64,000 nucleotides of DNA from NCBI GenBank assembly GCA_001179505.1, contig CDMY01000291.1:1-64000 (forward strand), given 5' to 3'. Origin of the DNA: Vitrella brassicaformis CCMP3155. Its lineage: Eukaryota > Protista > Chromerida. Positions 3,507 through 36,450 of this stretch are shown piece by piece. The translations under genes were made by a program, and so were the position numbers. Positions within the stretch are counted from its first letter, which is position 1; each line of letters starts with the position of its first letter. The notes beneath the pieces were generated by a model, which searched no databases, was not told the origin of the DNA, and saw only the letters and a list, made by a program, of their open reading frames with translations.

Positions 3507-6062
3507 TTACCCGGTGTCTCCCCACTTGACCTGATCCAGCAGGAGGATGTCGTAGACACGGCTCCTCAGGTCACGACTGACGCATCAAGGCAGCAAGGGA
3601 CAAACAGGCCGACAGGCAGAGGATAATGAATGGAGAGGCGTGGTGGCACTCGTCACTGCTTGTGCGTCGATGTATTGACCTGAAGTGGCTGTCCCATGTG
3701 ATCAGGTAGACGTCCTTGCGGTACACCTCGTTGGTTTTGATCTTGTCCAGTGCTGGCTCGAAGTCGCTGTCTCCCGCCACCAGAAAGATGACGTCCACCC
3801 GATCGTCACGCGCCTTATCCAACAGCTCCATGGTGATCTTGCAATCCGCGCCAGACTGCTGCCCATTGGGTTTCAGCCTGCATGCAAGATACGCCGTGAA
3901 CACCGCTCGTCATCCCGTCCGTCTGCTCGTTTGTGTGCATACCTGGATTCCCAGACGCCGAATCCCTCTGCTTTGAGGTCCTTGTGCAGCTGCTTTAGCG
4001 CCTCCCGCTCAGGGCCGAGACGCAGCTCCTTGTAATTGGTGCTGACATATAGCGAGTGATACGCGCTGACATCGTAAGCCCATTTCCGCCGCATCATCCC
4101 CACAAGCGACAGCACGTCACTCGTTCTCGGCTGGCGCCTGGTGTGCTCGGAGAACGTCTGGCAGAAGTAGGCCCCATCCACAATGAGCGCCGCCTTGCCT
4201 CTCAGAGCCACAGGCTCGGGCCTGATCAAGGAACGCCACACGTTAGCGTCAGGAGGGCTATGTGCTATGTTGTTCCGCTAGAATGGTCTCGCTCACGTGC
4301 TGGCCTGCGTCGGAAGCTGCATGGTGTAGGACGGAATGGCGACTGGCGGCGGAGTGGACACATTCGCTGACCTCTCACGATCACGAGCCCTGGTGCACAG
4401 AGGAATATACAAGGGGGAAGGATACAAGACGTGTATCGGCTGATCGGCTGATCTTTCGCATACAAGACTCACCTCCACGCTTCGAGCTCTTCCATGGTGT
4501 GGGCATTATGGCAGCTGTCTCCGTAGCGACAGCCACTTCCTGCACTCAGACACGCAAAACACGATGAACACAGCCACTTGTCTGTCTGTCTGTCTGTCTA
4601 GGTACCGTCAGGGTTGATGTATTTGCACATCGTCGCGTTGCCTCTGAGGTCCAGACGGCCATGTGCGAACGAACATGCGGCACCACGGGGGCAAACACCC
4701 TGACACGACCAGAAGCCAAAACGATCATTCTCACATTGGAGGAAACAAGACAATTGATGCCTCGTCACCTGTCGATCTGCTTCACATATTTTGGTCTTGT
4801 AGAAAGGCGCGTCAGGTCCGGTCGTCGGTCGAGGAGGGGGCGGCCTGTAGAAAGGCTGAAGGACAACAAACAGTGAGTGAGCCAATCACTGCCTCCTGTC
4901 GTCCATTCAACCCACCTTTAGGGCCGTGTGCGCAACCTGCTCGTCTTCGTTGTCTGAGGAGCCAGTGCTATCCCGCCGCATAAAATGCGCCAAGTGCTCT
5001 TGGGAGCTGGTGCCGTAGGTGGGCTGGGTGCGGCATAAAGCTGGGTTTGCGGAGACGGGAGAGCTGAAACGACACAACAGAGACGGAGAAAGGCGCCCCG
5101 TGAATGTGTGAACCGTTGCCCGTCTCTTGCCCTCTCACTTTGGCGTGTCTGGATACTGGGGATATACCGACGAAGCTGTAGTTGAGACCCAGCCCGGTGG
5201 CTTCGGCATTTGGGGCGCCGCAGACCTAACAGCACAAAAGGCATTCGAAACGCATGTCATCAATCGTTCATCTCTCGCCCTGCTCACGGTGTGGCATATT
5301 GCGGCGTCTGCAGAGTCAGATCTGAAGGCGCAGAAGTGCGGCTGCCCTCACGCTCATACGATCTGCACCGACGCAGTGCAAAAGCATCCAAATGAGCACG
5401 ATCAGAAGCGTCAGTGGCTGTGCCGTTACCTCCATGCTTCGAGCTCTTCCATGCTGTGGGCGTTGTGGCAGCTCTCCCCGTAGCGGCAACCACTCCCTGC
5501 ACTCGGGCACGCCCACCAGACACCAATGCCGACCCTCCACTCAGACGGTCTTCTCTTCCTGCTTACCATCTCTGTTGACCCACTCGCACATCTTGGCCCT
5601 CTTCCCTCGCAGCTCCACTCTGCCGTGCGCGTAGGTGCAGGCATCGCCTCGATTGCACCTCCCCTGAGCCAAGTGACAGAGATCAGCGGGATTTGAGATG
5701 AAAGAGTGTTTCGGTCGACCTACCCGGCGCCAGTGCTCGCAGAGCTCGACCTTGAAATTTGCCAGCTTGATCAGATCATCTGAGGAAATCAGAGAGGGAG
5801 GCACCCGTAAGTGACTGTTCCTATCTGAGTGGGATCTCATACCTCCTCCTGCCCGCCTCTCCTCCCGCAGGCCCGTCGACACGATCCAATGGCTGGTGCG
5901 ACGTGGTTGACACTTGGCGTGGGGTACGAATGTGCCCCGGTCGGCTGGAGGGAGAGGGATGCCGTTGCTGGGGGGTGGGTAAAGGGGCACCGGTGCAGGT
6001 GAGGGGGATGGTGTGTCTTCCCTGCCATATCCTGCGGCTGTCGGCGGGACGACGTCTGACAT
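3507..6062 (-). CDS. 4x CCCH zinc finger plus NYN (LabA/DUF88-type PIN) putative endoribonuclease, paralog 1
   Basis: Spliced fingers: FKVELCEHWRRGRCNRGDACTYAH, KMCEWVNRDGSGCRYGESCHNAH, YKTKICEADRQGVCPRGAACSFAH and TMCKYINPDGSGCRYGDSCHNAH. NYN motifs: ALIVDGAY, QSGADCKIT, IFLVAGDSDFEPAL, VYLITWD and SRDLRSRVYDILLLD. Stop TAA at 3507-3509. Confidence 0.85.
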
Positions 6063-28835: not shown

Positions 28836-29086
28836 TCAGTTGACTTGGTCCAGACACAGCCGCTCCACCACATGGGTTCCCAAGTGTTGGCTGCACAGCA
28901 CAGGGGAGGAAAGTTGGGACGACACATGCACTCGTGAAGTGCGTGTTGCTCTGCTTCCCCCCCTCTCACCTTGAGCTTGCCTCCCAAGTTAGCAAATAGA
29001 CCTCCTTGCGGTAAATCTCATTTCGCTTGATCTCTTCAAGCGCCGGGAGAAAGTCTCTGTCACCTAAACCACGCGCGCACACACAC

Positions 29087-29117
<31 letters not shown>

Positions 29118-30463
29118 GAGAGAGGTCACCAGCTAGAAGCACAATCGCGCTGATCTTGTCGTGTCTGGCCATCTTGAGCAACTGCACGTACAAAGAGATG
29201 TCACCACAGCGTAGGGCAATCTTTCTTTCTTACCTCGATGGTGATCTTGCAGTCTGCACCCGCCTGTGTCCCGTTCTCCTTCAAGCTGAACAACCAGCAC
29301 ATTCACATGACACACAAACGTGACGTTGCTCGGCCGTCGATGTGTTTCCTCACTCACTCTGCCTCCCACACTTCGAAGCACAACTCGTTCCGCAGGTGCT
29401 TGTGCAGCTGTCGGAGCGCCAGCTCCCTCTCCCTCGGCCGCAGATACCTGAAATGTTGATGTGCGTACATCAGTGGCCATGTGTTCCCTCCCCCTGCCCC
29501 CACCCCCGCAACCCAGCACGTTTTTCGCCTACTTGGGGTTGGTGCTGACGTACAGCGAGTGATACGTGGACACGCCAAACCCCCACCGCTCCTCAATGAG
29601 CCCGATGTAGCGCTCGATGTCTTTGATGCCCGGCAATGAGACGGACTTGAACGACTTGCACAAATACGCCCCATCGATGATGAGGGACGCATTGCCGCGC
29701 CAAGGCAACGCACGAGAGGGGCTCCCCGCCGAATCGAGGGCCGCTGGTACAGGACTACTCGTGATGGGAATCGACTGAGGCTGCGTGCTCTTCATGCTGA
29801 CGCACACACACACATCGATGTGACAGATATGCACGTGTTCGCGACACTGCGTGGTGCGTGGCTCACTCGACGGGCTGTAGTGTGGGCGTGGTGGCGTTGG
29901 AGCCGGCCCCAGTAGCACTAGCGCTGTAGGGCATGGGCTTGCCGTTGGCGCCACCTCTGCTCGACATACTGCTCGGACTATACGATCTGAACACACAGAG
30001 TCCTCATACGGCAGGTGAGCGTCAAGCTGCTCATCAGGGTGTGGTGTGCATCCTGTCCGCCTTACGCAGGCGTGGTGTCTTGTGGTTCCGTCGGAGTGTC
30101 GAACGTTGGTACTGCTGGCGGTGCGAATGCGTCCAAACTCTGCTGCGACCTGCAAGGTGAGATCACCAAACACCCACTTGAACGTGCGCGCCTTTTCCTG
30201 TCACGTGTGTGCCATTCGTTACCGCAATGCGTCGCGCTCCTGTGCAGTGTGCGCGAAAGGGCACTGTTGACCGAGCCGACAAAAGCCCTTCGCTGAAGCC
30301 CTCCACACACACAGCCCAAAAGAGTTGACCCGTGCAGCGGCCTGGCGTCGCTTTGCTTACCGATGTACTTGCACATAGTCGCCTTCTTGACCGGCCGCAT
30401 CCCCGCCCTTATCCCCAGTCCTCTTTCTGCCCGTTGCGTTGAGCCTATGGTGCCCGGCCTCAT
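28836..30463 (-). CDS. CCCH zinc finger plus NYN (LabA/DUF88-type) putative endoribonuclease, paralog 2
   Basis: KKATMCKYIAKGFCRLGQQCPFAH. NYN motifs: SLIIDGAY, YHSLYVSTN, QAGADCKITIE, IVLLAGD-RDFLPAL, EVYLLTWE and SQHLGTHVVERLCLDQVN*. Clearly paralogous to 3507-6062. Confidence 0.85.
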
Positions 30464-30562
30464 GGCTGCAAAAATCTACATCTACTCGCAGTGCTGCACA
30501 AGGTGTTGCTTTGTGCAGCAGTCCCTTTGCTTTTGCGACGGTCCCTCCTCTCAACCCTTTCT

Positions 30563-30587
30563 GCAGCGGTTTCATGGAGCACCCTAG
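30563..30587 (+). promoter_or_regulatory. Recurrent promoter motif, copy 3 (in the ~190 bp head-to-head gap between CCCH-NYN paralog 2 and the KH gene)
   Basis: gcagcggtttcatggagcaccctag, identical to 9660-9684. Confidence 0.6.
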
Positions 30588-30656
30588 GCGGTGCACTGCG
30601 AGCCTCCACGCGTCTCTGTTAAGGGAGGCGAGATACGCAGACTACAGATAGCAGGA

Positions 30657-33187
30657 ATGGCAGTACGGGTCAGGGTCGCCCTTGAAGGCAACTCAGAAAG
30701 CCTCAAGATGATGATGCTGGATCCTCAGTGGAGCGAGGAGGTGTGTAAGAGAAAGATTCTGGGGAAGCTGGGGATGCTGAAGGGAACGGACACCAAAGCC
30801 GATGATGCTATTGCAAGGTGAGAGCATCGCCATCGAAAAAGCACGAGAAAAAGAGCCTTCATCTTCGTCTGCGTGTGTGCTTCTGTGCAGATCTTCGGCA
30901 TTGCTTTGCAAAGGCGCAGAAATCGATGACCCGTCTGTGCTCCGTGAAGGTACGGCGCACGGAAAAGTTGTCCCGATTCTCTTTTTCAACTGCCTTGACT
31001 GTGTTCAGACGATGAACTGGTTGTTAAGATTGGCAACGCGGAGCCGCAAACATCACCATCATCCCGTGCGCGGGATGGCAAGAAACGCGAGCCATCTCCT
31101 GACTCGGACCTCTTCTCGGCAGTATGGGACAGATTTGCATCGCACCCGGGCAACGGGGCGCATACCTCTGACGTAAGCAGCACGCAACCCGCTTTGGATG
31201 GAGAAAGACTGTTTCGTGTGCTGTTCGACGAAGCCGACAATTCCGGAAGACCGACACAAGATTGACGTCAGTGTGCCCGTCGTGATGAAGGGCCCATCAA
31301 CTGTCTTGCCGGGCGTCCAATTGGCGAAGGAATACAGCTCCACACACGTAGGAGAGAAAGTAGGCTGCCAAACTGCTGTGCACTGCGGGTTCTTTCCTTT
31401 GCATTCATCTGTGCAGGTGCAGTCCCCTGCTAACAAGTCTGCTTCATGGAACGATGTTGCCGCGAGCTCACAAGGTACTGCAAAACAGACCGAGAAACAC
31501 CTGACTGTGCTTCGTGCGGTGTGGCATTTGCCCTCTCAGATAGTGGTACTCCGTCGTCTTCGAGACAGCAAGAGATCTGCACCTCGCAGAGCGGCTTCTG
31601 TCGTCTTGGCAACTCGTGTCCGATGAGAATCCGCCATGCTGACAAAATGTACGCAACACGAGACGCATGTAGACAGTTGTCACGATGAGTGCCCACAAGT
31701 GCTGCTCTCTTGTGTCCGTCAGGCCTCGCTCTGTGTCGCTGACTGATGGCCCCTCTGCCCCAGAAACGAGCACTGTGTACCAAGAGCTACGCGGCAAAGC
31801 ATACGGTGACAGATACGCAGACACATCTGCAAGGAACGATGTGTCTTGCGCGTGGGCCGCGACAGGTTTGGTGAGAGGCAAGAACGCTCAGAATCAGGAT
31901 CGAATCTCAGCCATCTTCAATGTCAAGCTGGAGATGACACCAGGTGGGCAATGCACACGCACCGGCATACCCATGCAGCTTCCCTTCCATCTGCATTCTT
32001 CTCCCTTGTGATGTGCAGGCGGCAACATCGAGGCTGGAAAGTACAGACTGAAAGGCACCAAGGAGAACATCGAACTCGCCCAGGTGAGTGAGGTGGGCAG
32101 CTTTCGAGGAAAGGAACAACAGTGAGTGCGGTGATGTGTTTTGTTGGGGCTGTCTGGGTGCCTTGCAGCGGTTCATCCATTGGTGGTGTCAGCTCGCCCA
32201 TCCCGCCGTGAAGGACGGCACACCGCAGTACACCCAAGCTGGTACACATACATATCATGTCCCTCCAATGCATTCAGGTCTGCTCAGATGTGCTTCGAAG
32301 TCGAGGTGATGTCGATGATCGAGTCCGTCCATCCTGGCTCCTATGACACGGGCGGGCATGACGTCGTAGCTCATGACGAAGGCGTTGCTGTGGAGTCGAT
32401 GCGCGTACCGGCGCATCATGCCAACACTCTGTTCGGTCCCGTGGGCAGTCGTCTGGCCAAGCTCAAGCGTGCGTCGGGGTGCATTCACGTCACGTGTATT
32501 GGCGGCGTAGCCGTCTTCATCGGTCAGTTGACACACAGGCAGACGCGCATTACCGCATAGCAAGTTGTTTGTTTGGTTTGTGCGTTCTGTTCAGGCTCCC
32601 GAGAAGAGCGGGTGCAAGCCAGGCTTTATCTCCAAGAGCAGAGTGACTTCCTCAGAGACCCAGCGGCATTCAAAGCTGATGGCAGAACGTGAGTGAAATG
32701 GAGAGGGAGGGGAACACGTGCACGGACATGAGCTTACTTGATCGGCTGCTGACTTCAGGTATGTCGAGGTTGTGGCCAGATCGCTGGCAACCTCTCAATT
32801 GCCCATCGAGAAGGACGAGCCGCTGCTCAGGCAGATCACAGCGATCGAAGCTGATACTTCAACGATGATCACATACCGCACCATGGAGTAGGCGACACCA
32901 ACATCTCAACGCACAAACGCAGCCTTCACGTATGCGGCTGCCTTGGCTTTGTGTGACCCAGACGGTGCGTCTTCTTCGTGATAGTGGGCCCCGAGGCTTT
33001 CAGTGCCAAGCAGCGTCTGCAGAAGCTTCTGGTGCAGACATTGGTCATGGGCTCTGTGAGCGCTCCCCCAGCCCCTCCGTTTCCTCCCCCTCGACTCGAG
33101 GCTCTTCGCTCTGCAACGAACACGGAAGAAGACAAGTCCCAGTCGCATGGCAGCGAGGAACACAAGCATCCACCGACCCATCGATGA
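30657..33187 (+). CDS. KHA/ubiquitin-like N-terminus plus variant CCCH plus 2-3 KH domains; possibly continuous with the downstream CCCH-NYN
   Basis: GAEIDDPSVLREDDELVVKIGNAEP (KHA/KCTD9-like); CTSQSGFCRLGNSCPMRIRH; GLVRGKNAQNQDRISAIFNVKL...YRLKGTKENIELAQ; VPAHHANTLFGPVGSRLAKLKRASGCIHV...FIGSREERVQARLYL; and a third degenerate KH-like segment. Confidence 0.7.
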
Positions 33188-33210
33188 ACTAACTGTCCGT
33201 GTGCATGCAG

Positions 33211-34738
33211 CGTGGATGCGCCTGACGCAGCAGCTGCATCGCCAGTCGGAAGCGCACTGAGCAAATCTACGAGACGAAAGTAAGACCGCAGATGGACAGA
33301 TGCGTGTGCATTTCGTCTTCTCTGTACCATTGTGTGCGCCGTGTTGTTGTGTGTGCGTAGGGACGTTGTCAAGAAGAAGAAGAAGCCGATTCCCTGCATC
33401 TATTACGCAAAAGGATACTGCAGGAACGGAGAGCTGTGCCGATTTGCCCACACCGTCACCCAGGCGAACAGCAAGGCCCAAGTCCCCAAGCCTCCCTTCA
33501 TCGACGACAAGGACCGTCAAAGGGCGGCCATGATCGTCGATGGCGCATGGGCAGCTCGGGCATTCAGGTCATCCAACGACCGCGCCATGACTCATGATGA
33601 TTTCGCCCGCATCATCGTGAGGAGGACGAAAGAAGAAGATCCGAACGCGGCTTTGTCTCTGCTTCACGTCTCTGTCTGTATGTCATCCTGACTTCGTCAG
33701 CGCGAGGCGGAGCTGTACCTGCCGCTCAACATCAAGAGAGAGCTGAGCAGCTACTTCAACGTTGATGCTGACGACTTCTTCCACGTACGCGTCAGCGATA
33801 CATGCATGAGGCTGGAAACCAATCTGTCGCTCTGTCTGTCTGTCCACGTTGTTTTCTGTCCTCTCAGAAGATACTCGGCGGTCTCCCGCCGGGCCTCTTG
33901 ATTCGCGATGGCTTGAAGAGCCTGCAAGAGGAGATTCCGAGAAAGAGTGGCATTCGTTTCGTCCAGTCCAAGTGAGCCCGTCACGATGCACCACACGCCC
34001 ATTTCATGCCACATCCTTTCCTTATCCCCTTCATCAGATTCAAGGAGCGACACGTGAGGTGTCCGTGCGGCCATGGGTTTCCGACGTTCGCGCAGAAGGG
34101 GACCGACATTTCGATCGCGCTCGAGATGATGAGCAAGGCCGCCAGCGAGAGCGTCGATGCCATCCTCTTTGTGGTAGGTGTCGTCCTCACGTGCGTGTGG
34201 GTGGGCACATTGCTGGTGGGGTGGGCTGAGTGTCACCATTCCTCGAGTGCTTCGTCCTTTGCAGGCGGGGGACATGGACTTTGCGCCAGTCATCGAGTTC
34301 GTGACCAAGCAGTTCAACAAGCCTGTGTATCTCATCGGGTGGGAGAAATGCCTCAGGTCAGTCACCCAGGCACTCTCATGACGCGCGACACTCTGCTCTC
34401 ATCTGTGCCCTCTGTGAGCCCCCCTCTGTGTGTGTGTGCATTCATATAGTTCTGACTTGTTGAAGCCGTGCGAGGGCTACCATTTCCTGCTGTCCAATGA
34501 CCTGCCTCTCCCAGCAAAGGCTGTATACCAGCAGAAGGCACCGGCGTCCCCCACCGCATCCCAGCCCACGGCGTCCGGCGAGAAAGCATCGTCACCTCTG
34601 TGCCAGCCAGGGGAGGCCAGTGCTTCCTCGCCGCGTTTGTCTGATGGGCCTGGCGGGGAGGAGGGTGGCGCTTCTGACGCCTCGCCCGAGGTGAGGGCTG
34701 GGAGCGTGGAGAGCTTGCCGAATTTGATAGATTTTTGA
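33211..34738 (+). CDS. CCCH zinc finger plus NYN (LabA/DUF88-type) putative endoribonuclease, paralog 3; no own start codon found
   Basis: PCIYYAKGYCRNGELCRFAH; AMIVDGAW; FKERHVRCPCGHGFPTFAQKGTDISIALEM; ILFV-AGDMDFAPVI; VYLIGWE; SSDLLKPCEGYHFL. The first visible exon begins at a splice acceptor (33210). Confidence 0.88.
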
Positions 34739-35057
34739 GTGATATGGTGCGTGTTGACGGCTGAGCCCTTCTCCTTTTCTTCGTAAAGCTTGCGTATTTG
34801 TGCCTTTATCCATCCATCGATAGATCTTTACGTCCAGCTGTCTATAGTAGGTTGTGTACTGTGTTGTGCATGTCGAAGGTGCATGTGATTGGGATGGGTA
34901 CACACTGTGCAAGACTTCACCAATTGGACTTCACGGATATGCTACCCTCCAATAATTGGAATTCGCCTCGTTATGTTTCACCTTACCCAATCTGATGCAA
35001 TTGAGGGATGAGTTCACGGCTGATGAGGGAATGTGTGCCGCGCCTTGAGCGATCGCG

Positions 35058-35081
35058 GCAGCGTTTCACGTGATACCCTGG
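35058..35081 (+). promoter_or_regulatory. Weaker copy of the recurrent promoter motif, ~40 bp upstream of the carrier ATG
   Basis: gcagcgtttcacgtgataccctgg versus the consensus gcagcggtttcatggagcaccctag. Confidence 0.35.
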
Positions 35082-35119
35082 CAGCACAAACCGCGAAGAA
35101 GAAGAAAGAAGCTGTTGGG

Positions 35120-36450
35120 ATGGCGATGAAGCAGTGCGTGCTGTCCTCCCTGCCGGCGTTAGTTGGCGTGATCATCTGCCTATGGCCTTCGCATGCATCT
35201 CCTCCCATCGCACGACCAGCCCTCTTCCTGCCGACACGCACACGCCACGACGACACCTACTCGCCAGCAATCGTCACCGAGCGACTTCCCTCACGCCGGC
35301 CACTGCCATCTGTCAAGGCGTCCCGTTCTTACCTCATCAACAACGCCAAGGGGACGGCACAGAGCGTCAAGAAGCAGTTGCTGAGCCTGTTTGCGGGCGG
35401 CATGGCCGGTACTATCGCATCGTCCATCACCACGCCGATAGAGGTGGTCAAGACGCAGCTCCAGGCGAGTGCTGCGGGGGGGCATCAGAACTTCTTCCAG
35501 GCGGCAAAGGCGGTCTATGACTCGGGTGGACTGCCGGCATTCTACCGTGGCCTTGCACCGACGCTGGTCGGCATCATTCCGGCGCGGTCGATATACTTCT
35601 GGGGCTACTCGACCATGAAGTCGTTTCTGTTTCCCTACATGGACAACAGCCCCCTCACACATATACTCAGTGCTGCTGTGGCCGGGGGCATATCAAACAC
35701 TGGTGAGTCAGGCACATGGCACACTGGGACAGGTCATGCGTACATTCACTCGTCGTTGTCCCCTGTGCTGCGTGCCTTTCTTGCTTACTCTCAGTGACAA
35801 ATCCCATCTGGATGGTCCGCACCCGGCTGCAGCTGCTGGCACAGCCGGGGCAGTCAGCCTACAAGGGATACACGGACGCCGTTCGGCAGATCTGGGCCAA
35901 CGAGGGCTTCGGCGGCTTCATGAAGGGCGTCACGGCCTCCTACTGGGGCATTTCCGAGGGCTGCATCAACTGGGTGGTCTACGAGCGACTCAAGAAGGTC
36001 GTCAACAGCCACATGCACACGAACGGCACATCCACCCTCCTCCCTCTCCCCAAGAACGCTCAGCTCTTCCTCAGCGCAGCGTGCTCCAAGCTGCTGGCCA
36101 CATCGTGCACCTACCCACATGAAGTGGTCCGTACGCGGCTTCGCGAGCAGGCCGTTGGTGGCGTCTACAAATACACGGGCATGCTGCAGGCGCTGCGGCT
36201 CATTGCCAGAGAGGAGGGCAGGCGGGGCCTGTACGCCGGCTTCAGGACGCACCTGCTGCGTGTGGTGCCCAACAATGCGATACTGTTCCTGTCTTACGAG
36301 CTCATCAACGCGTGGCTGCATACGCAGATGGAACGGGAGGAGGAGGAGACCGGGCAGATCGACAGGGGACCGAGGAACAAGAAGGGGGAAGGGGCGAAGG
36401 GGAAGGTGGCAGCCCTCATCGCGCCAAGAAGGCCACTGGCTGCCAGTTGA
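35120..36450 (+). CDS. Mitochondrial carrier family protein, Rim2/SLC25A33/36 pyrimidine-nucleotide carrier-like, with a signal-like N-terminal extension; intron ~35703-35795
   Basis: Three PxD/ExxK/R repeats: TTPIEVVKTQLQ, TNPIWMVRTRLQ and TYPHEVVRTRLRE (the last two are typical of the Rim2 group). Confidence 0.9.

What the first reader, a model, noticed from the sequence alone, without database searches (positions are those of the whole stretch)
30657..34738. KHA-like, CCCH, KH-KH-(KH) module directly followed by CCCH-NYN: a possible single large RNA-sensing nuclease
Seen in sequence: exons encode a KHA/KCTD9-like ubiquitin-fold motif (GAEIDDPSVLREDDELVV), a variant CCCH (C-x6-C-x5-C-x5-H), one KH with intact GxxG (GPVG) and one or two degenerate KH domains. 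About 25 bp after the stop at 33187 comes an acceptor-led exon that runs into CCCH-NYN paralog 3, which has no ATG of its own. I could not find a canonical donor of the right phase, so fusion is unproven. Established: KH plus NYN defines vertebrate KHNYN/N4BP1 (KHNYN is a cofactor of the CCCH protein ZAP), using a different PIN family. Inference: a convergent all-in-one KH/CCCH/NYN effector with an oligomerisation-type N-terminal domain.
Basis: partly seen in the sequence, partly recalled or inferred. Interest (0 to 1): 0.8.

Follow-up and report, generated by a model that had tools for sequence, protein, structure and literature searches.

The report
Stop-interrupted KH and NYN nuclease gene
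In the alga Vitrella brassicaformis one spliced, polyadenylated mRNA carries an RNA-binding protein (zinc finger plus three KH domains) and, in the same frame behind a UGA stop, an RNA-cutting CCCH-NYN module with no start codon of its own, so the public "fused" 873-residue protein is not what the sequenced transcripts encode.

Summary
The single large protein is not shown.

The genome is Vitrella brassicaformis CCMP3155. Six RNA assemblies give one 20-exon, poly(A)-tailed mRNA (window 30607-34965). Its 2,697-nt frame from ATG 30657 to the stop at 34736-38 is open except for one TGA at 33185-87.

- **Upstream, 547 aa:** a beta-grasp N-domain that is only weakly KHA-like, a CCCH-like finger, one bona fide type I KH domain and two degenerate ones.
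- **Downstream, 350 codons:** a canonical CCCH finger and a LabA/MARF1-type NYN domain with its aspartates intact. It has strong coding bias and no in-frame ATG before the finger.

The TGA sits inside one continuous exon (32962-33279). The AG 23 nt after it is not used in any assembly. The public annotation (CEL99886.1, 873 aa) fuses the halves by calling a 75-nt intron (33136-33210). That segment is retained in all assemblies, has a weak donor and is exon-like in composition.

Best reading: a KH/CCCH/NYN fusion gene whose nuclease half needs a bypass of the stop, by minor splicing or readthrough. Rivals are a recent nonsense mutation or separate translation of the nuclease half.

Earlier scan notes report similar CCCH-KH-NYN genes with retained introns elsewhere in this genome; I did not check them.

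The parts
30607..34965 (+). Whole mRNA: 20 exons and 19 GT-AG introns of 50-93 nt, with a poly(A) tail after 34965
   Evidence: Spliced contigs in 4 runs. JGI transcript contigs L010 and L009 align to the window exon by exon. L010 ends in a run of A.
30657..33187 (+). First ORF: 547 codons plus TGA. Spliced reference: L010:51-1694.
   Evidence: Translation of the spliced model and of L010.
30657..31046 (+). N-terminal domain, aa 1-85 on exons 1-3. Predicted beta-grasp, weakly KHA-like.
   Evidence: AF2 gives strand-strand-helix-helix-strand-strand at pLDDT 55-77. Language-model neighbours are all ubiquitin-like families at scores of 0.87 or less. KHA PF11834 scores 13.8 bits against a cut-off of 29.6.
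31578..31637 (+). Variant CCCH-like finger, C-x6-C-x5-C-x5-H
   Evidence: Read from the sequence. The paralogue has C-x6-C-x5-C-x3-H at the aligned place. Pfam CCCH families reach only E 0.1.
31723..32227 (+). KH-like unit 1 on exons 7-10. The GxxG loop is degenerate (RGKN).
   Evidence: KH_N4BP1_1st E 0.0045 and KH_1 E 0.048, both sub-threshold. Aligns to a KH unit of alveolate multi-KH proteins and to the paralogue.
32378..32656 (+). KH domain 2, type I. GPVG is at 32435-32446.
   Evidence: KH_1 22.1 bits against 21.5. AF2 pLDDT 70-86 with a beta-alpha-alpha-beta-beta-alpha layout. VIA Z 10.9 to MEX-3C KH, 8.3 to KHNYN KH, 8.2 to N4BP1 KH.
32760..33046 (+). KH-like unit 3 on exons 13-14. The GxxG loop is lost.
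   Evidence: Aligned by position to a strong KH_1 unit of P0005. No Pfam hit of its own. AF2 confidence is low.
32962..33279 (+). Exon 14: one continuous 318-nt exon that holds the TGA
   Evidence: Contig pieces span 32962-33279 with 0 mismatches in X1, X2, X7 and X8, and in L009 and L010.
33185..33187 (+). In-frame TGA, context CAT CGA TGA ACT AAC. It is codon 548 of 898.
   Evidence: It is present in the genome and in all RNA assemblies.
33136..33210 (+). 75-nt in-frame segment that the public model CEL99886.1 calls an intron. All RNA assemblies retain it.
   Evidence: P0014 reads ...TEEDN|VDAPD.... Donor GTCCCA scores 1.8 and the acceptor 7.0, which only 2 of 191 exonic AGs reach. Composition log-odds is -0.18, the exon mean; true introns score -0.02 to 0.37.
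33188..33394 (+). Linker of 43 codons, split by intron 14 (33280-33360). It has no in-frame ATG. In-frame GTG at 33212.
   Evidence: The JGI ORF caller starts P0010 at this GTG.
33395..33451 (+). Canonical CCCH finger, C-x8-C-x5-C-x3-H
   Evidence: PF00642 31 bits against a cut-off of 20.5. Motif scan.
33515..34500 (+). NYN domain, LabA/MARF1 type, on exons 15-20. Aspartates lie in IVDG, GTD and GDMD.
   Evidence: PF01936 42.1 bits against 24.2. D91, G226, D227 and D229 are invariant among Vitrella NYN paralogues. AF2 core pLDDT 75-92. Foldseek: 2qip at E 2.8e-8 and TM 0.72; MARF1 NYN 5yaa and 6fdl at probability 1.0.
33530..33532 (+). First in-frame ATG after the TGA. It lies after the CCCH finger and inside the first NYN strand.
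   Evidence: The MMETSP ORF P0015 (263 aa) starts here. The AF2 strand covers residues 84-91 of the downstream half.
34736..34738 (+). Final stop of the long frame, followed by a 227-nt 3' UTR

Best explanation
**What is shown**
- This is one transcription unit of Vitrella brassicaformis. It makes a 2,974-nt poly(A) mRNA.
- Its first ORF gives a 547-aa RNA-binding protein. This has a beta-grasp N-domain, a disordered stretch, a CCCH-like finger, three KH-type units (one canonical) and a proline-rich tail. It ends at UGA 33185-87.
- A CCCH finger and a LabA/MARF1-type NYN ribonuclease domain follow in the same frame. They have six correctly spliced introns, intact catalytic aspartates and strong codon bias, but no AUG before the finger.

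**What is inferred**
- The locus is a KH/CCCH/NYN gene fusion.
- The nuclease half can be made only as a C-terminal extension of the KH protein, by bypassing the UGA.
- One route is removal of the 75-nt in-frame segment 33136-33210 in a minority of transcripts, as the public model assumes. The other is low-level UGA readthrough.
- In the sampled cultures the main product would then be the nuclease-free 547-aa binder.
- The long form would tether an RNA endonuclease to KH and CCCH RNA-recognition modules. That is a one-chain analogue of ZAP plus KHNYN.
For: - **One mRNA.** Spliced contigs from 4 runs in 3 studies cover every exon from 30607 to 34965 with 0 mismatches and no break at the stop. 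The same assemblies do break at the true gene end (34965, with the next gene starting at 35093). Two JGI transcript contigs give the same structure, and one carries a poly(A) tail.
- **One frame.** The 898 codons are open except for a single TGA.
- **The downstream half is a live coding sequence.**
  - NYN scores 42.1 bits and CCCH 31 bits.
  - GC3 is 0.77, against 0.47 in the 3' UTR.
  - The aspartates are invariant among paralogues.
  - The fold matches LabA-like and MARF1 NYN structures.
- **No start codon of its own.** There is no in-frame ATG before the finger. A neighbouring paralogue has its own ATG about 34 codons before its finger.
- **A splice route is formally available.** Only 2 of 191 exonic AGs score as well as the acceptor-like AG at 33210. 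It is in frame with GT 33136 (75 nt), GT 32965 and the real donor at 32888.
- **Not a recent insertion.** The genome holds no close paralogue of the NYN half.
Against: - No assembly (0 of 6) shows any splice round the TGA.
- The 75-nt segment is exon-like in composition and its donor GTCCCA is weak.
- The stop context UGA-A is not a known leaky one.
- The RNA downstream folds no better than shuffled sequence (z -0.3).
- No SECIS or other Rfam element was found.
- The 31 linker codons have a GC3 of 0.45, which is UTR-like.
- No relative with KH plus NYN was found outside Vitrella, so conservation cannot be tested.
- All data may come from one isolate lineage.
- Contigs cannot exclude an internal transcription start.
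Confidence: 0.5

Rival explanations
1. A recent nonsense mutation. The gene was a continuous KH-CCCH-NYN ORF. In the sequenced isolate a sense codon in the disordered linker became TGA, so the nuclease half is now an untranslated but still intact tail.
For: - There is a single TGA in an otherwise open 898-codon frame.
- No recoding signal was found.
- All reads are identical, which is consistent with one isolate lineage.
- The stop lies in a low-complexity linker, where a hit is easily tolerated.
- Unchecked scan notes report other multidomain Vitrella genes whose main mRNA breaks frame.
Against: - The downstream half shows no decay at all: 6 introns are spliced, the aspartates are kept and GC3 is 0.77. 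The event would have to be very recent.
- A good acceptor lies 23 nt after the stop and is in frame with three donors. That is an odd coincidence under this reading.
Confidence: 0.2
2. Two cistrons. The KH protein ends at its natural stop. The CCCH-NYN protein is made separately, either from an internal transcription start or by re-initiation. It would start at the in-frame GUG 33212 (context AGC GUG G) or at AUG 33530.
For: - The neighbouring paralogue is a stand-alone CCCH-NYN gene with a short leader.
- ORF callers produce 342-aa (GTG start) and 263-aa (ATG start) products.
- In run X2 the 3' contig is deeper than the upstream contigs, 19.9 against about 11.
- Contigs would merge overlapping transcripts, as the X8 contig does with the next gene.
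Against: - No AUG precedes the finger.
- AUG 33530 lies inside the first NYN strand and would drop both the CCCH finger and conserved residues.
- Two short out-of-frame upstream ORFs (ATG 33204 and 33214) precede it.
- The X2 depth step lies in exon 16, downstream of the CCCH exon, and not near the stop.
- Exon 14 is flanked by spliced introns on both sides within one contig.
Confidence: 0.15
3. The public model is right as it stands. 33136-33210 is a normal constitutive intron and the 873-aa fusion (CEL99886.1) is the main product.
For: - The Augustus model was built with RNA-seq intron hints (PMC4501334).
- The segment is 75 nt long, within the 50-93 nt range of the 19 constitutive introns, and it has GT..AG ends.
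- The acceptor is good.
Against: - All six RNA assemblies, from three pipelines, retain the segment.
- The donor is weak and the composition is exon-like.
Confidence: 0.05
4. The UGA encodes selenocysteine.
For: Unchecked scan notes say that Vitrella has selenoproteins.
Against: - No SECIS-like match was found in 30400-35200 at E up to 5.
- The position is in a disordered linker, not at a redox Cys site.
Confidence: 0.01

Closest known systems
Vertebrate KHNYN / N4BP1 (di-KH plus NYN endoribonucleases; KHNYN is a cofactor of the CCCH protein ZAP)
   Same: KH-type modules sit N-terminal to a PIN-like NYN nuclease, with CCCH fingers in the same system. KH2 superposes on the KHNYN and N4BP1 KH structures at Z 8.3 and 8.2. 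KH1 has a sub-threshold hit to KH_N4BP1_1st.
   Different: The nuclease is PF01936 (LabA/MARF1 type). No Regnase/KHNYN-type NYN family appeared in the Pfam scans. There is no CUBAN domain. There are three KH units plus a beta-grasp N-domain. The CCCH fingers are in cis. The two halves are separated by an in-frame UGA.
MARF1 / LabA-like NYN (PF01936) ribonucleases
   Same: The NYN domain belongs to this family by sequence (42.1 bits) and by fold (2qip, 5yaa, 6fdl), with its acidic residues kept.
   Different: MARF1 pairs NYN with RRM and LOTUS domains (from my own knowledge). Here NYN is paired with a CCCH finger and, across the stop, with KH units. An insertion carrying an RCPC motif lies between the core strands.
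Alveolate multi-KH proteins (P0005 897 aa, P0007 641 aa, P0003 1687 aa)
   Same: The KH module (aa 314-436, and by alignment 222-505) is homologous to their repeated unit of several KH domains. A local phmmer run gave E 1e-15 and 3e-13, scaled to 1e6 sequences.
   Different: Those proteins are KH-only repeats, with no CCCH, no NYN and no beta-grasp N-domain.
Public model CEL99886.1 / UniProt A0A0G4ER08, 'C3H1-type domain-containing protein', 873 aa
   Same: It is the same locus, the same 20 exons and the same domains.
   Different: It removes 33136-33210 as an intron. The transcript assemblies keep that segment and the TGA inside it.
Programmed stop-codon readthrough and retained-intron switches that extend a protein by a C-terminal module
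   Same: One in-frame UGA is followed by a long, open, domain-bearing frame on the same mRNA.
   Different: There is no known leaky context (UGA-A), no stimulatory structure, and no evidence of conservation or of translation past the stop.

Membership tests
KH domain type I (PF00013) | Profile score above Pfam's gathering cut-off | tested here: met
   22.1 bits against 21.5 on the 547-aa product, at aa 356-404. This is borderline: the same stretch scores 20.7 bits inside the 873-aa model.
KH domain type I (PF00013) | GxxG loop between two helices, in a beta-alpha-alpha-beta-beta-alpha fold | tested here: met
   GPVG at 32435-32446. AF2 gives E354-359, H362-369, H374-383, E387-391, E394-399 and H401-419 at pLDDT 70-86. 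Z 10.9 to 8 against many solved KH domains. This applies to KH2 only. KH1 and KH3 lack GxxG and stay sub-threshold or without a hit.
NYN, LabA/MARF1 type (PF01936) | Profile score above the gathering cut-off | tested here: met
   42.1 bits against 24.2, E 1.6e-10.
NYN, LabA/MARF1 type (PF01936) | Conserved acidic residues of the PIN-like site | tested here: met
   D in IVDG and the two D in GDMD are invariant in the alignment with five Vitrella NYN proteins. D in GTD is conserved wherever the region is covered.
NYN, LabA/MARF1 type (PF01936) | PIN-like alpha/beta fold | tested here: met
   Foldseek: 2qip at E 2.8e-8 and TM 0.72; MARF1 NYN 5yaa at TM 0.73 and 6fdl, both at probability 1.0.
NYN, LabA/MARF1 type (PF01936) | Ribonuclease activity | not testable with these tools
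   Needs a biochemical assay.
zf-CCCH (PF00642), downstream finger | C-x8-C-x5-C-x3-H spacing and a score above the cut-off | tested here: met
   CIYYAKGYCRNGELCRFAH at 33395-33451. 31 bits against 20.5.
zf-CCCH, upstream variant finger | CCCH spacing and a profile score | tested here: inconclusive
   The C-x6-C-x5-C-x5-H spacing is non-canonical. The best Pfam hits are CCCH families, but only at E 0.1. The paralogue has C-x6-C-x5-C-x3-H at the aligned place.
KHA domain (PF11834) | Profile score above the gathering cut-off over the whole domain | tested here: not met
   13.8 bits against 29.6, E 0.062, covering only profile positions 43-67 of 67. The language-model neighbour is rank 5 at 0.80, below the 0.9 mark for a hit to be more than a lead. 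A ubiquitin-like beta-grasp remains likely.
KHNYN / N4BP1 family | Regnase/Zc3h12a-type NYN nuclease. The feature and its Pfam number PF11977 are from my own knowledge. | tested here: not met
   The nuclease domain matches PF01936 only. No PF11977 hit was listed at E up to 1.
KHNYN / N4BP1 family | Extended di-KH module | tested here: inconclusive
   KH_N4BP1_1st scores 17.5 bits against 27. The structural similarity of KH2 is no better than to generic KH domains.
Programmed stop-codon readthrough | Leaky stop context and/or a stimulatory downstream RNA structure | tested here: not met
   The context is UGA ACU AAC. The 95 nt after the stop fold at z -0.30 against shuffles.
Programmed stop-codon readthrough | Conservation of the stop and of the downstream frame in relatives; ribosomes or peptides past the stop | not testable with these tools
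   No orthologue was found. No ribosome profiling or proteomics data are on hand.
Selenoprotein | SECIS element in the 3' UTR | tested here: not met
   No SECIS match in 30400-35200 at E up to 5.

The most novel reading that the evidence does not exclude
The UGA-containing 75-nt segment works as a switch, either as a regulated retained intron or as a readthrough site. By default the cell makes a nuclease-free KH/CCCH RNA binder. On a signal it makes the same binder fused to a CCCH-NYN endonuclease. That would be a one-gene, two-output RNA-surveillance effector in a free-living relative of Apicomplexa, convergent with ZAP plus KHNYN.
Probability: 0.3. Interest if true: 0.65.

Novelty: new variant of a known kind. 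Interest (0 to 1): 0.45.

Why it matters
- **An independent combination of known parts.** KH plus NYN, and CCCH plus NYN, are the building plans of vertebrate antiviral and mRNA-decay nucleases (KHNYN, N4BP1, Regnase, MARF1). A chromerid alga combining KH, CCCH and a different NYN family on one mRNA would be an independent invention of a targeted RNA nuclease.
- **A possible on/off control.** The in-frame UGA would offer a simple way to switch the nuclease half on or off.
- **A database correction.** The 873-aa database protein rests on an intron that the assembled transcripts do not remove. Domain-architecture surveys that count it as a proven KH-NYN fusion should be treated with caution.

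Tried and rejected
- **Pfam on single exons.** This was too weak for NYN and KH. It was solved by finding natural spliced references: JGI transcript contigs L010 and L009, and proteins P0010 and P0014.
- **Six middle introns.** I first inferred them from contig length, depth per bin and a splice-site matrix. An early best-scoring model had a second in-frame stop. It was rejected when the bins were re-read with leftmost junction placement, and L010 then confirmed the final model.
- **SECIS or other RNA family.** None found.
- **Structure after the stop.** Not above shuffles.
- **Branch-point motif.** CTAAC lies 18 nt before AG 33210, but true introns of this gene mostly lack such a motif, so it is uninformative.
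- **Exact search for the post-acceptor sequence in JGI metagenome contigs.** It found nothing. This says nothing, because the JGI contigs that do hold that sequence were not returned.
- **Word searches with the 547-aa and 350-aa halves.** No relatives beyond the self cluster. The exhaustive HMMER search with the KH2 exon found only KH-only proteins.
- **Close paralogues of exons 1, 14, 15 and 18 in the genome.** None found.
- **Overlap of KH_1 and NYN hits on the same contigs of the genome.** No overlap, but both lists are lower bounds.
- **N-domain against PDB sequences.** No match.
- **Operators' rules.**
  - No typed spliced sequence was sent to any search tool.
  - The protein was never read through the stop in a tool; the halves were searched apart.
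  - Read laying was given 5,701 letters.


Full report
**Source of the window.** The window is contig C291 of a 72,700,666-bp assembly in 1,064 contigs. Paralogous proteins returned by the protein search are named Vitrella brassicaformis CCMP3155. The size and scaffold number match the published assembly (PMC4501334).

**Transcript structure.** I laid the contigs of four public runs on 30200-35900.
- They gave 21 spliced joints, of which 15 were listed.
- One spliced contig per run (2,974, 2,949 and 4,683 nt in X1, X7 and X8) ran from about 30600 to 34965 with no mismatch.
- Six joints between 31417 and 32277 were not printed. I inferred them from the 452 nt of contig sequence in that interval, the depth per bin and a splice-site matrix.
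- Two JGI transcript contigs then confirmed them exactly. These were found through the downstream protein: L010 (2,981 nt) and L009 (2,983 nt).
- L010 ends in a run of A directly after 34965.
- The gene has 20 exons and 19 GT-AG introns of 50-93 nt.
- In runs X1, X2 and X7 the contig stops at 34965-34967 and the next gene's contig starts at 35093-35116. These assemblies therefore do resolve a real gene boundary. There is no break anywhere near 33187.

**The reading frame.** The spliced frame from ATG 30657 to the stop at 34736-38 is 2,697 nt.
- It is open except for one TGA, codon 548, at 33185-87 (CAT CGA TGA ACT AAC).
- The TGA lies inside exon 14 (32962-33279), which is continuous in all six assemblies.
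- The 350 codons after it are in the same frame as the 547 before it.
- There is no in-frame ATG until 33530. That ATG lies after the CCCH finger and inside the first strand of the NYN domain.

**Upstream product (L010:51-1691, 547 aa).**
- *KH2.* It reaches Pfam KH_1 just over the cut-off: 22.1 against 21.5 bits, aa 356-404. AF2 folds aa 350-425 as beta-alpha-alpha-beta-beta-alpha at pLDDT 70-86. That region matches solved type I KH domains at Z up to 10.9. KHNYN and N4BP1 KH domains score 8.3 and 8.2.
- *KH1.* It has only sub-threshold hits: KH_N4BP1_1st at E 0.0045 and KH_1 at E 0.048.
- *KH3.* It has no Pfam hit. In the alignment it sits where alveolate multi-KH proteins have a strong KH_1 unit.
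- *Homologues of the KH module.* An exhaustive HMMER search with the KH2 exon found only those KH-only proteins and a Vitrella paralogue fragment.
- *Variant finger.* Its C-x6-C-x5-C-x5-H spacing aligns with C-x6-C-x5-C-x3-H in the paralogue. It stays at E 0.1 in Pfam.
- *N-terminal 85 residues.* They are predicted as a beta-grasp-like strand-strand-helix-helix-strand-strand unit at pLDDT 55-77. The language-model neighbours are all ubiquitin-like families: DWNN, KHA, CIDE-N, TDP-43_N and others, all below 0.9. KHA is the best Pfam family, but at 13.8 bits against a cut-off of 29.6 and only over the final motif. 'KHA-like' is therefore a resemblance, not membership.

**Downstream part (L010:1695-2744, 350 aa; P0010 is the same from GTG 33212).**
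- zf-CCCH scores 31 bits against 20.5, and NYN PF01936 scores 42.1 against 24.2.
- Aligned with five annotated Vitrella NYN proteins, the aspartates of IVDG and GDMD are invariant and that of GTD is conserved.
- The AF2 core has pLDDT 75-92.
- Foldseek's best match is the LabA-like protein 2qip (E 2.8e-8, TM 0.72). MARF1 NYN domains follow at probability 1.0.
- GC3 is 0.77, against 0.68 in the KH module and 0.47 in the 3' UTR. All six of its introns are spliced.
- This is a live-looking coding sequence, not an old pseudogene.
- Its nearest paralogue in the genome is distant, at about 25% identity. No close copy of its exons exists, so it is not a recent insertion.
- The divergently transcribed neighbour, a CCCH-NYN gene on the minus strand, has its own ATG (30463) about 34 codons before its finger. 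A stand-alone CCCH-NYN gene with a short leader is therefore the likely ancestral form.

**The public annotation.**
- The 90% cluster of P0010 contains CEL99886.1 / A0A0G4ER08, 873 aa, 'C3H1-type domain-containing protein'.
- Its sequence reads ...TEEDN|VDAPD.... That is my model minus 33136-33210, a 75-nt in-frame 'intron' that removes the TGA.
- The paper says the models came from Augustus with RNA-seq intron hints, and that genes with in-frame stops were marked as pseudogenes.
- For the intron:
  - It has GT..AG ends, and its length fits the gene's other introns.
  - Only 2 of 191 exonic AGs score as well as its acceptor (7.0).
- Against the intron:
  - The donor GTCCCA is weak (1.8).
  - The trinucleotide log-odds of the segment is -0.18. 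That is the exon mean; true introns score -0.02 to 0.37.
  - None of the six assemblies from three pipelines removes it.
- The same AG is also in frame with GT 32965 and with the real donor of intron 13 at 32888. Skipping exon 14 altogether (318 nt) would also keep the frame.
- None of these forms was seen. Contigs drop rare variants, so absence is not shown.

**Recoding signals.** There is no SECIS or other Rfam match. The 95 nt after the stop fold no better than shuffles (z -0.30). UGA-A is not a classic leaky context; that point is from my own knowledge of readthrough contexts. The 31 linker codons have a UTR-like GC3 of 0.45, but they are few and are rich in Ala, Ser and Pro codons.

**Weighing the readings.**
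- *Well supported:* one mRNA, one frame, one TGA, a working-looking nuclease half with no start codon, and a normal RNA-binding half.
- *Most economical reading:* a KH/CCCH/NYN fusion gene whose long product needs a bypass of the UGA, by minority splicing or by readthrough. The 547-aa binder would be the main product (confidence 0.5).
- *A very recent nonsense mutation in a once-continuous ORF (0.2):* it fits the lack of signals and the single-isolate data. It does not explain the good in-frame acceptor.
- *Separate translation of the nuclease half (0.15):* it needs an internal start and a non-AUG codon, or the loss of the finger.
- *The annotation as written (0.05):* the RNA contradicts it.
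- *Selenocysteine:* effectively excluded (0.01).

**Comparison with known systems.**
- It works like KHNYN/N4BP1 or Regnase, in that RNA-binding modules are tethered to a PIN-like nuclease.
- It is not a member of those families, because the nuclease is the LabA/MARF1 type.
- The protein is already deposited but unstudied. No paper cites its accessions.
- Earlier notes of this scan report other CCCH-KH-NYN and KH-NYN genes elsewhere in this genome. One of them has transcripts that mostly keep a frame-breaking intron. I could not locate or test those loci. As leads, they raise the prior that retained introns gate such nucleases in Vitrella.

**Compliance with the operators' rules.** Spliced sequences were sent to tools only as references to natural transcript contigs or database proteins. 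The two halves were always searched apart. The spliced model was built only inside scripts.

Noticed in passing
window 32228-32288 (L009 against L010): There is an alternative intron 10. JGI contig L009 (sample 3300017297) uses a 46-nt intron, 32242-32287, in place of 32228-32277. The net change is +4 nt, which frameshifts the upstream ORF into two overlapping ORFs of 356 and 218 aa. In run X2 the contig breaks at 32287, which fits two isoforms being present.
   Followed up: partly
L004 (G000:C978:23-1738, minus strand) and transcript L005: This is a partial paralogue of the CCCH-KH module (exons 6-13, about 35-41% identity). It has a more canonical C-x6-C-x5-C-x3-H finger. It is transcribed, but its reading frame changes twice in the contig. 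It runs into a short repeat at the contig end, so whether it once had a NYN part cannot be seen.
   Followed up: partly
window 28900-30600, minus strand: This is a divergent neighbour, a stand-alone CCCH-NYN gene. Its ATG is at 30463 and it has an intron at 30293-30360 inside the finger (MCKYI|AKGFCRLGQQCPFAH). Its 5' end lies only tens of bases from the 30607 start of the KH gene, so the two genes probably share a very short bidirectional promoter region.
   Followed up: partly
window 34448-35701: In run X8 one contig runs without a gap from the last exon of this gene into the next gene, a mitochondrial-carrier-like ORF from about 35093. Runs X1, X2 and X7 break between 34965 and 35093. This is either transcriptional read-through or DNA in that run.
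   Followed up: no
window 33748-33784: In run X2 the contig depth steps from about 11 upstream to 19.9 downstream, at a contig break inside exon 16. This could be 3' bias or a further isoform.
   Followed up: no
window 4499-4561 and 3679-3894, minus strand: This is a third CCCH-NYN gene in the window. Its NYN match scores 37.8 bits. It has the same ...MCKYI|intron|...C-x5-C-x3-H exon structure as the neighbour at 30.3 kb, which differs from the intron position in the gene studied here.
   Followed up: no
P0005, P0007, P0003 (proteins from other organisms): These alveolate-type proteins are built from repeats of a unit of several KH domains. One unit type is so divergent that Pfam KH_1 barely sees it (E 0.006 or no hit). 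That unit type is the closest relative of KH2 here.
   Followed up: partly
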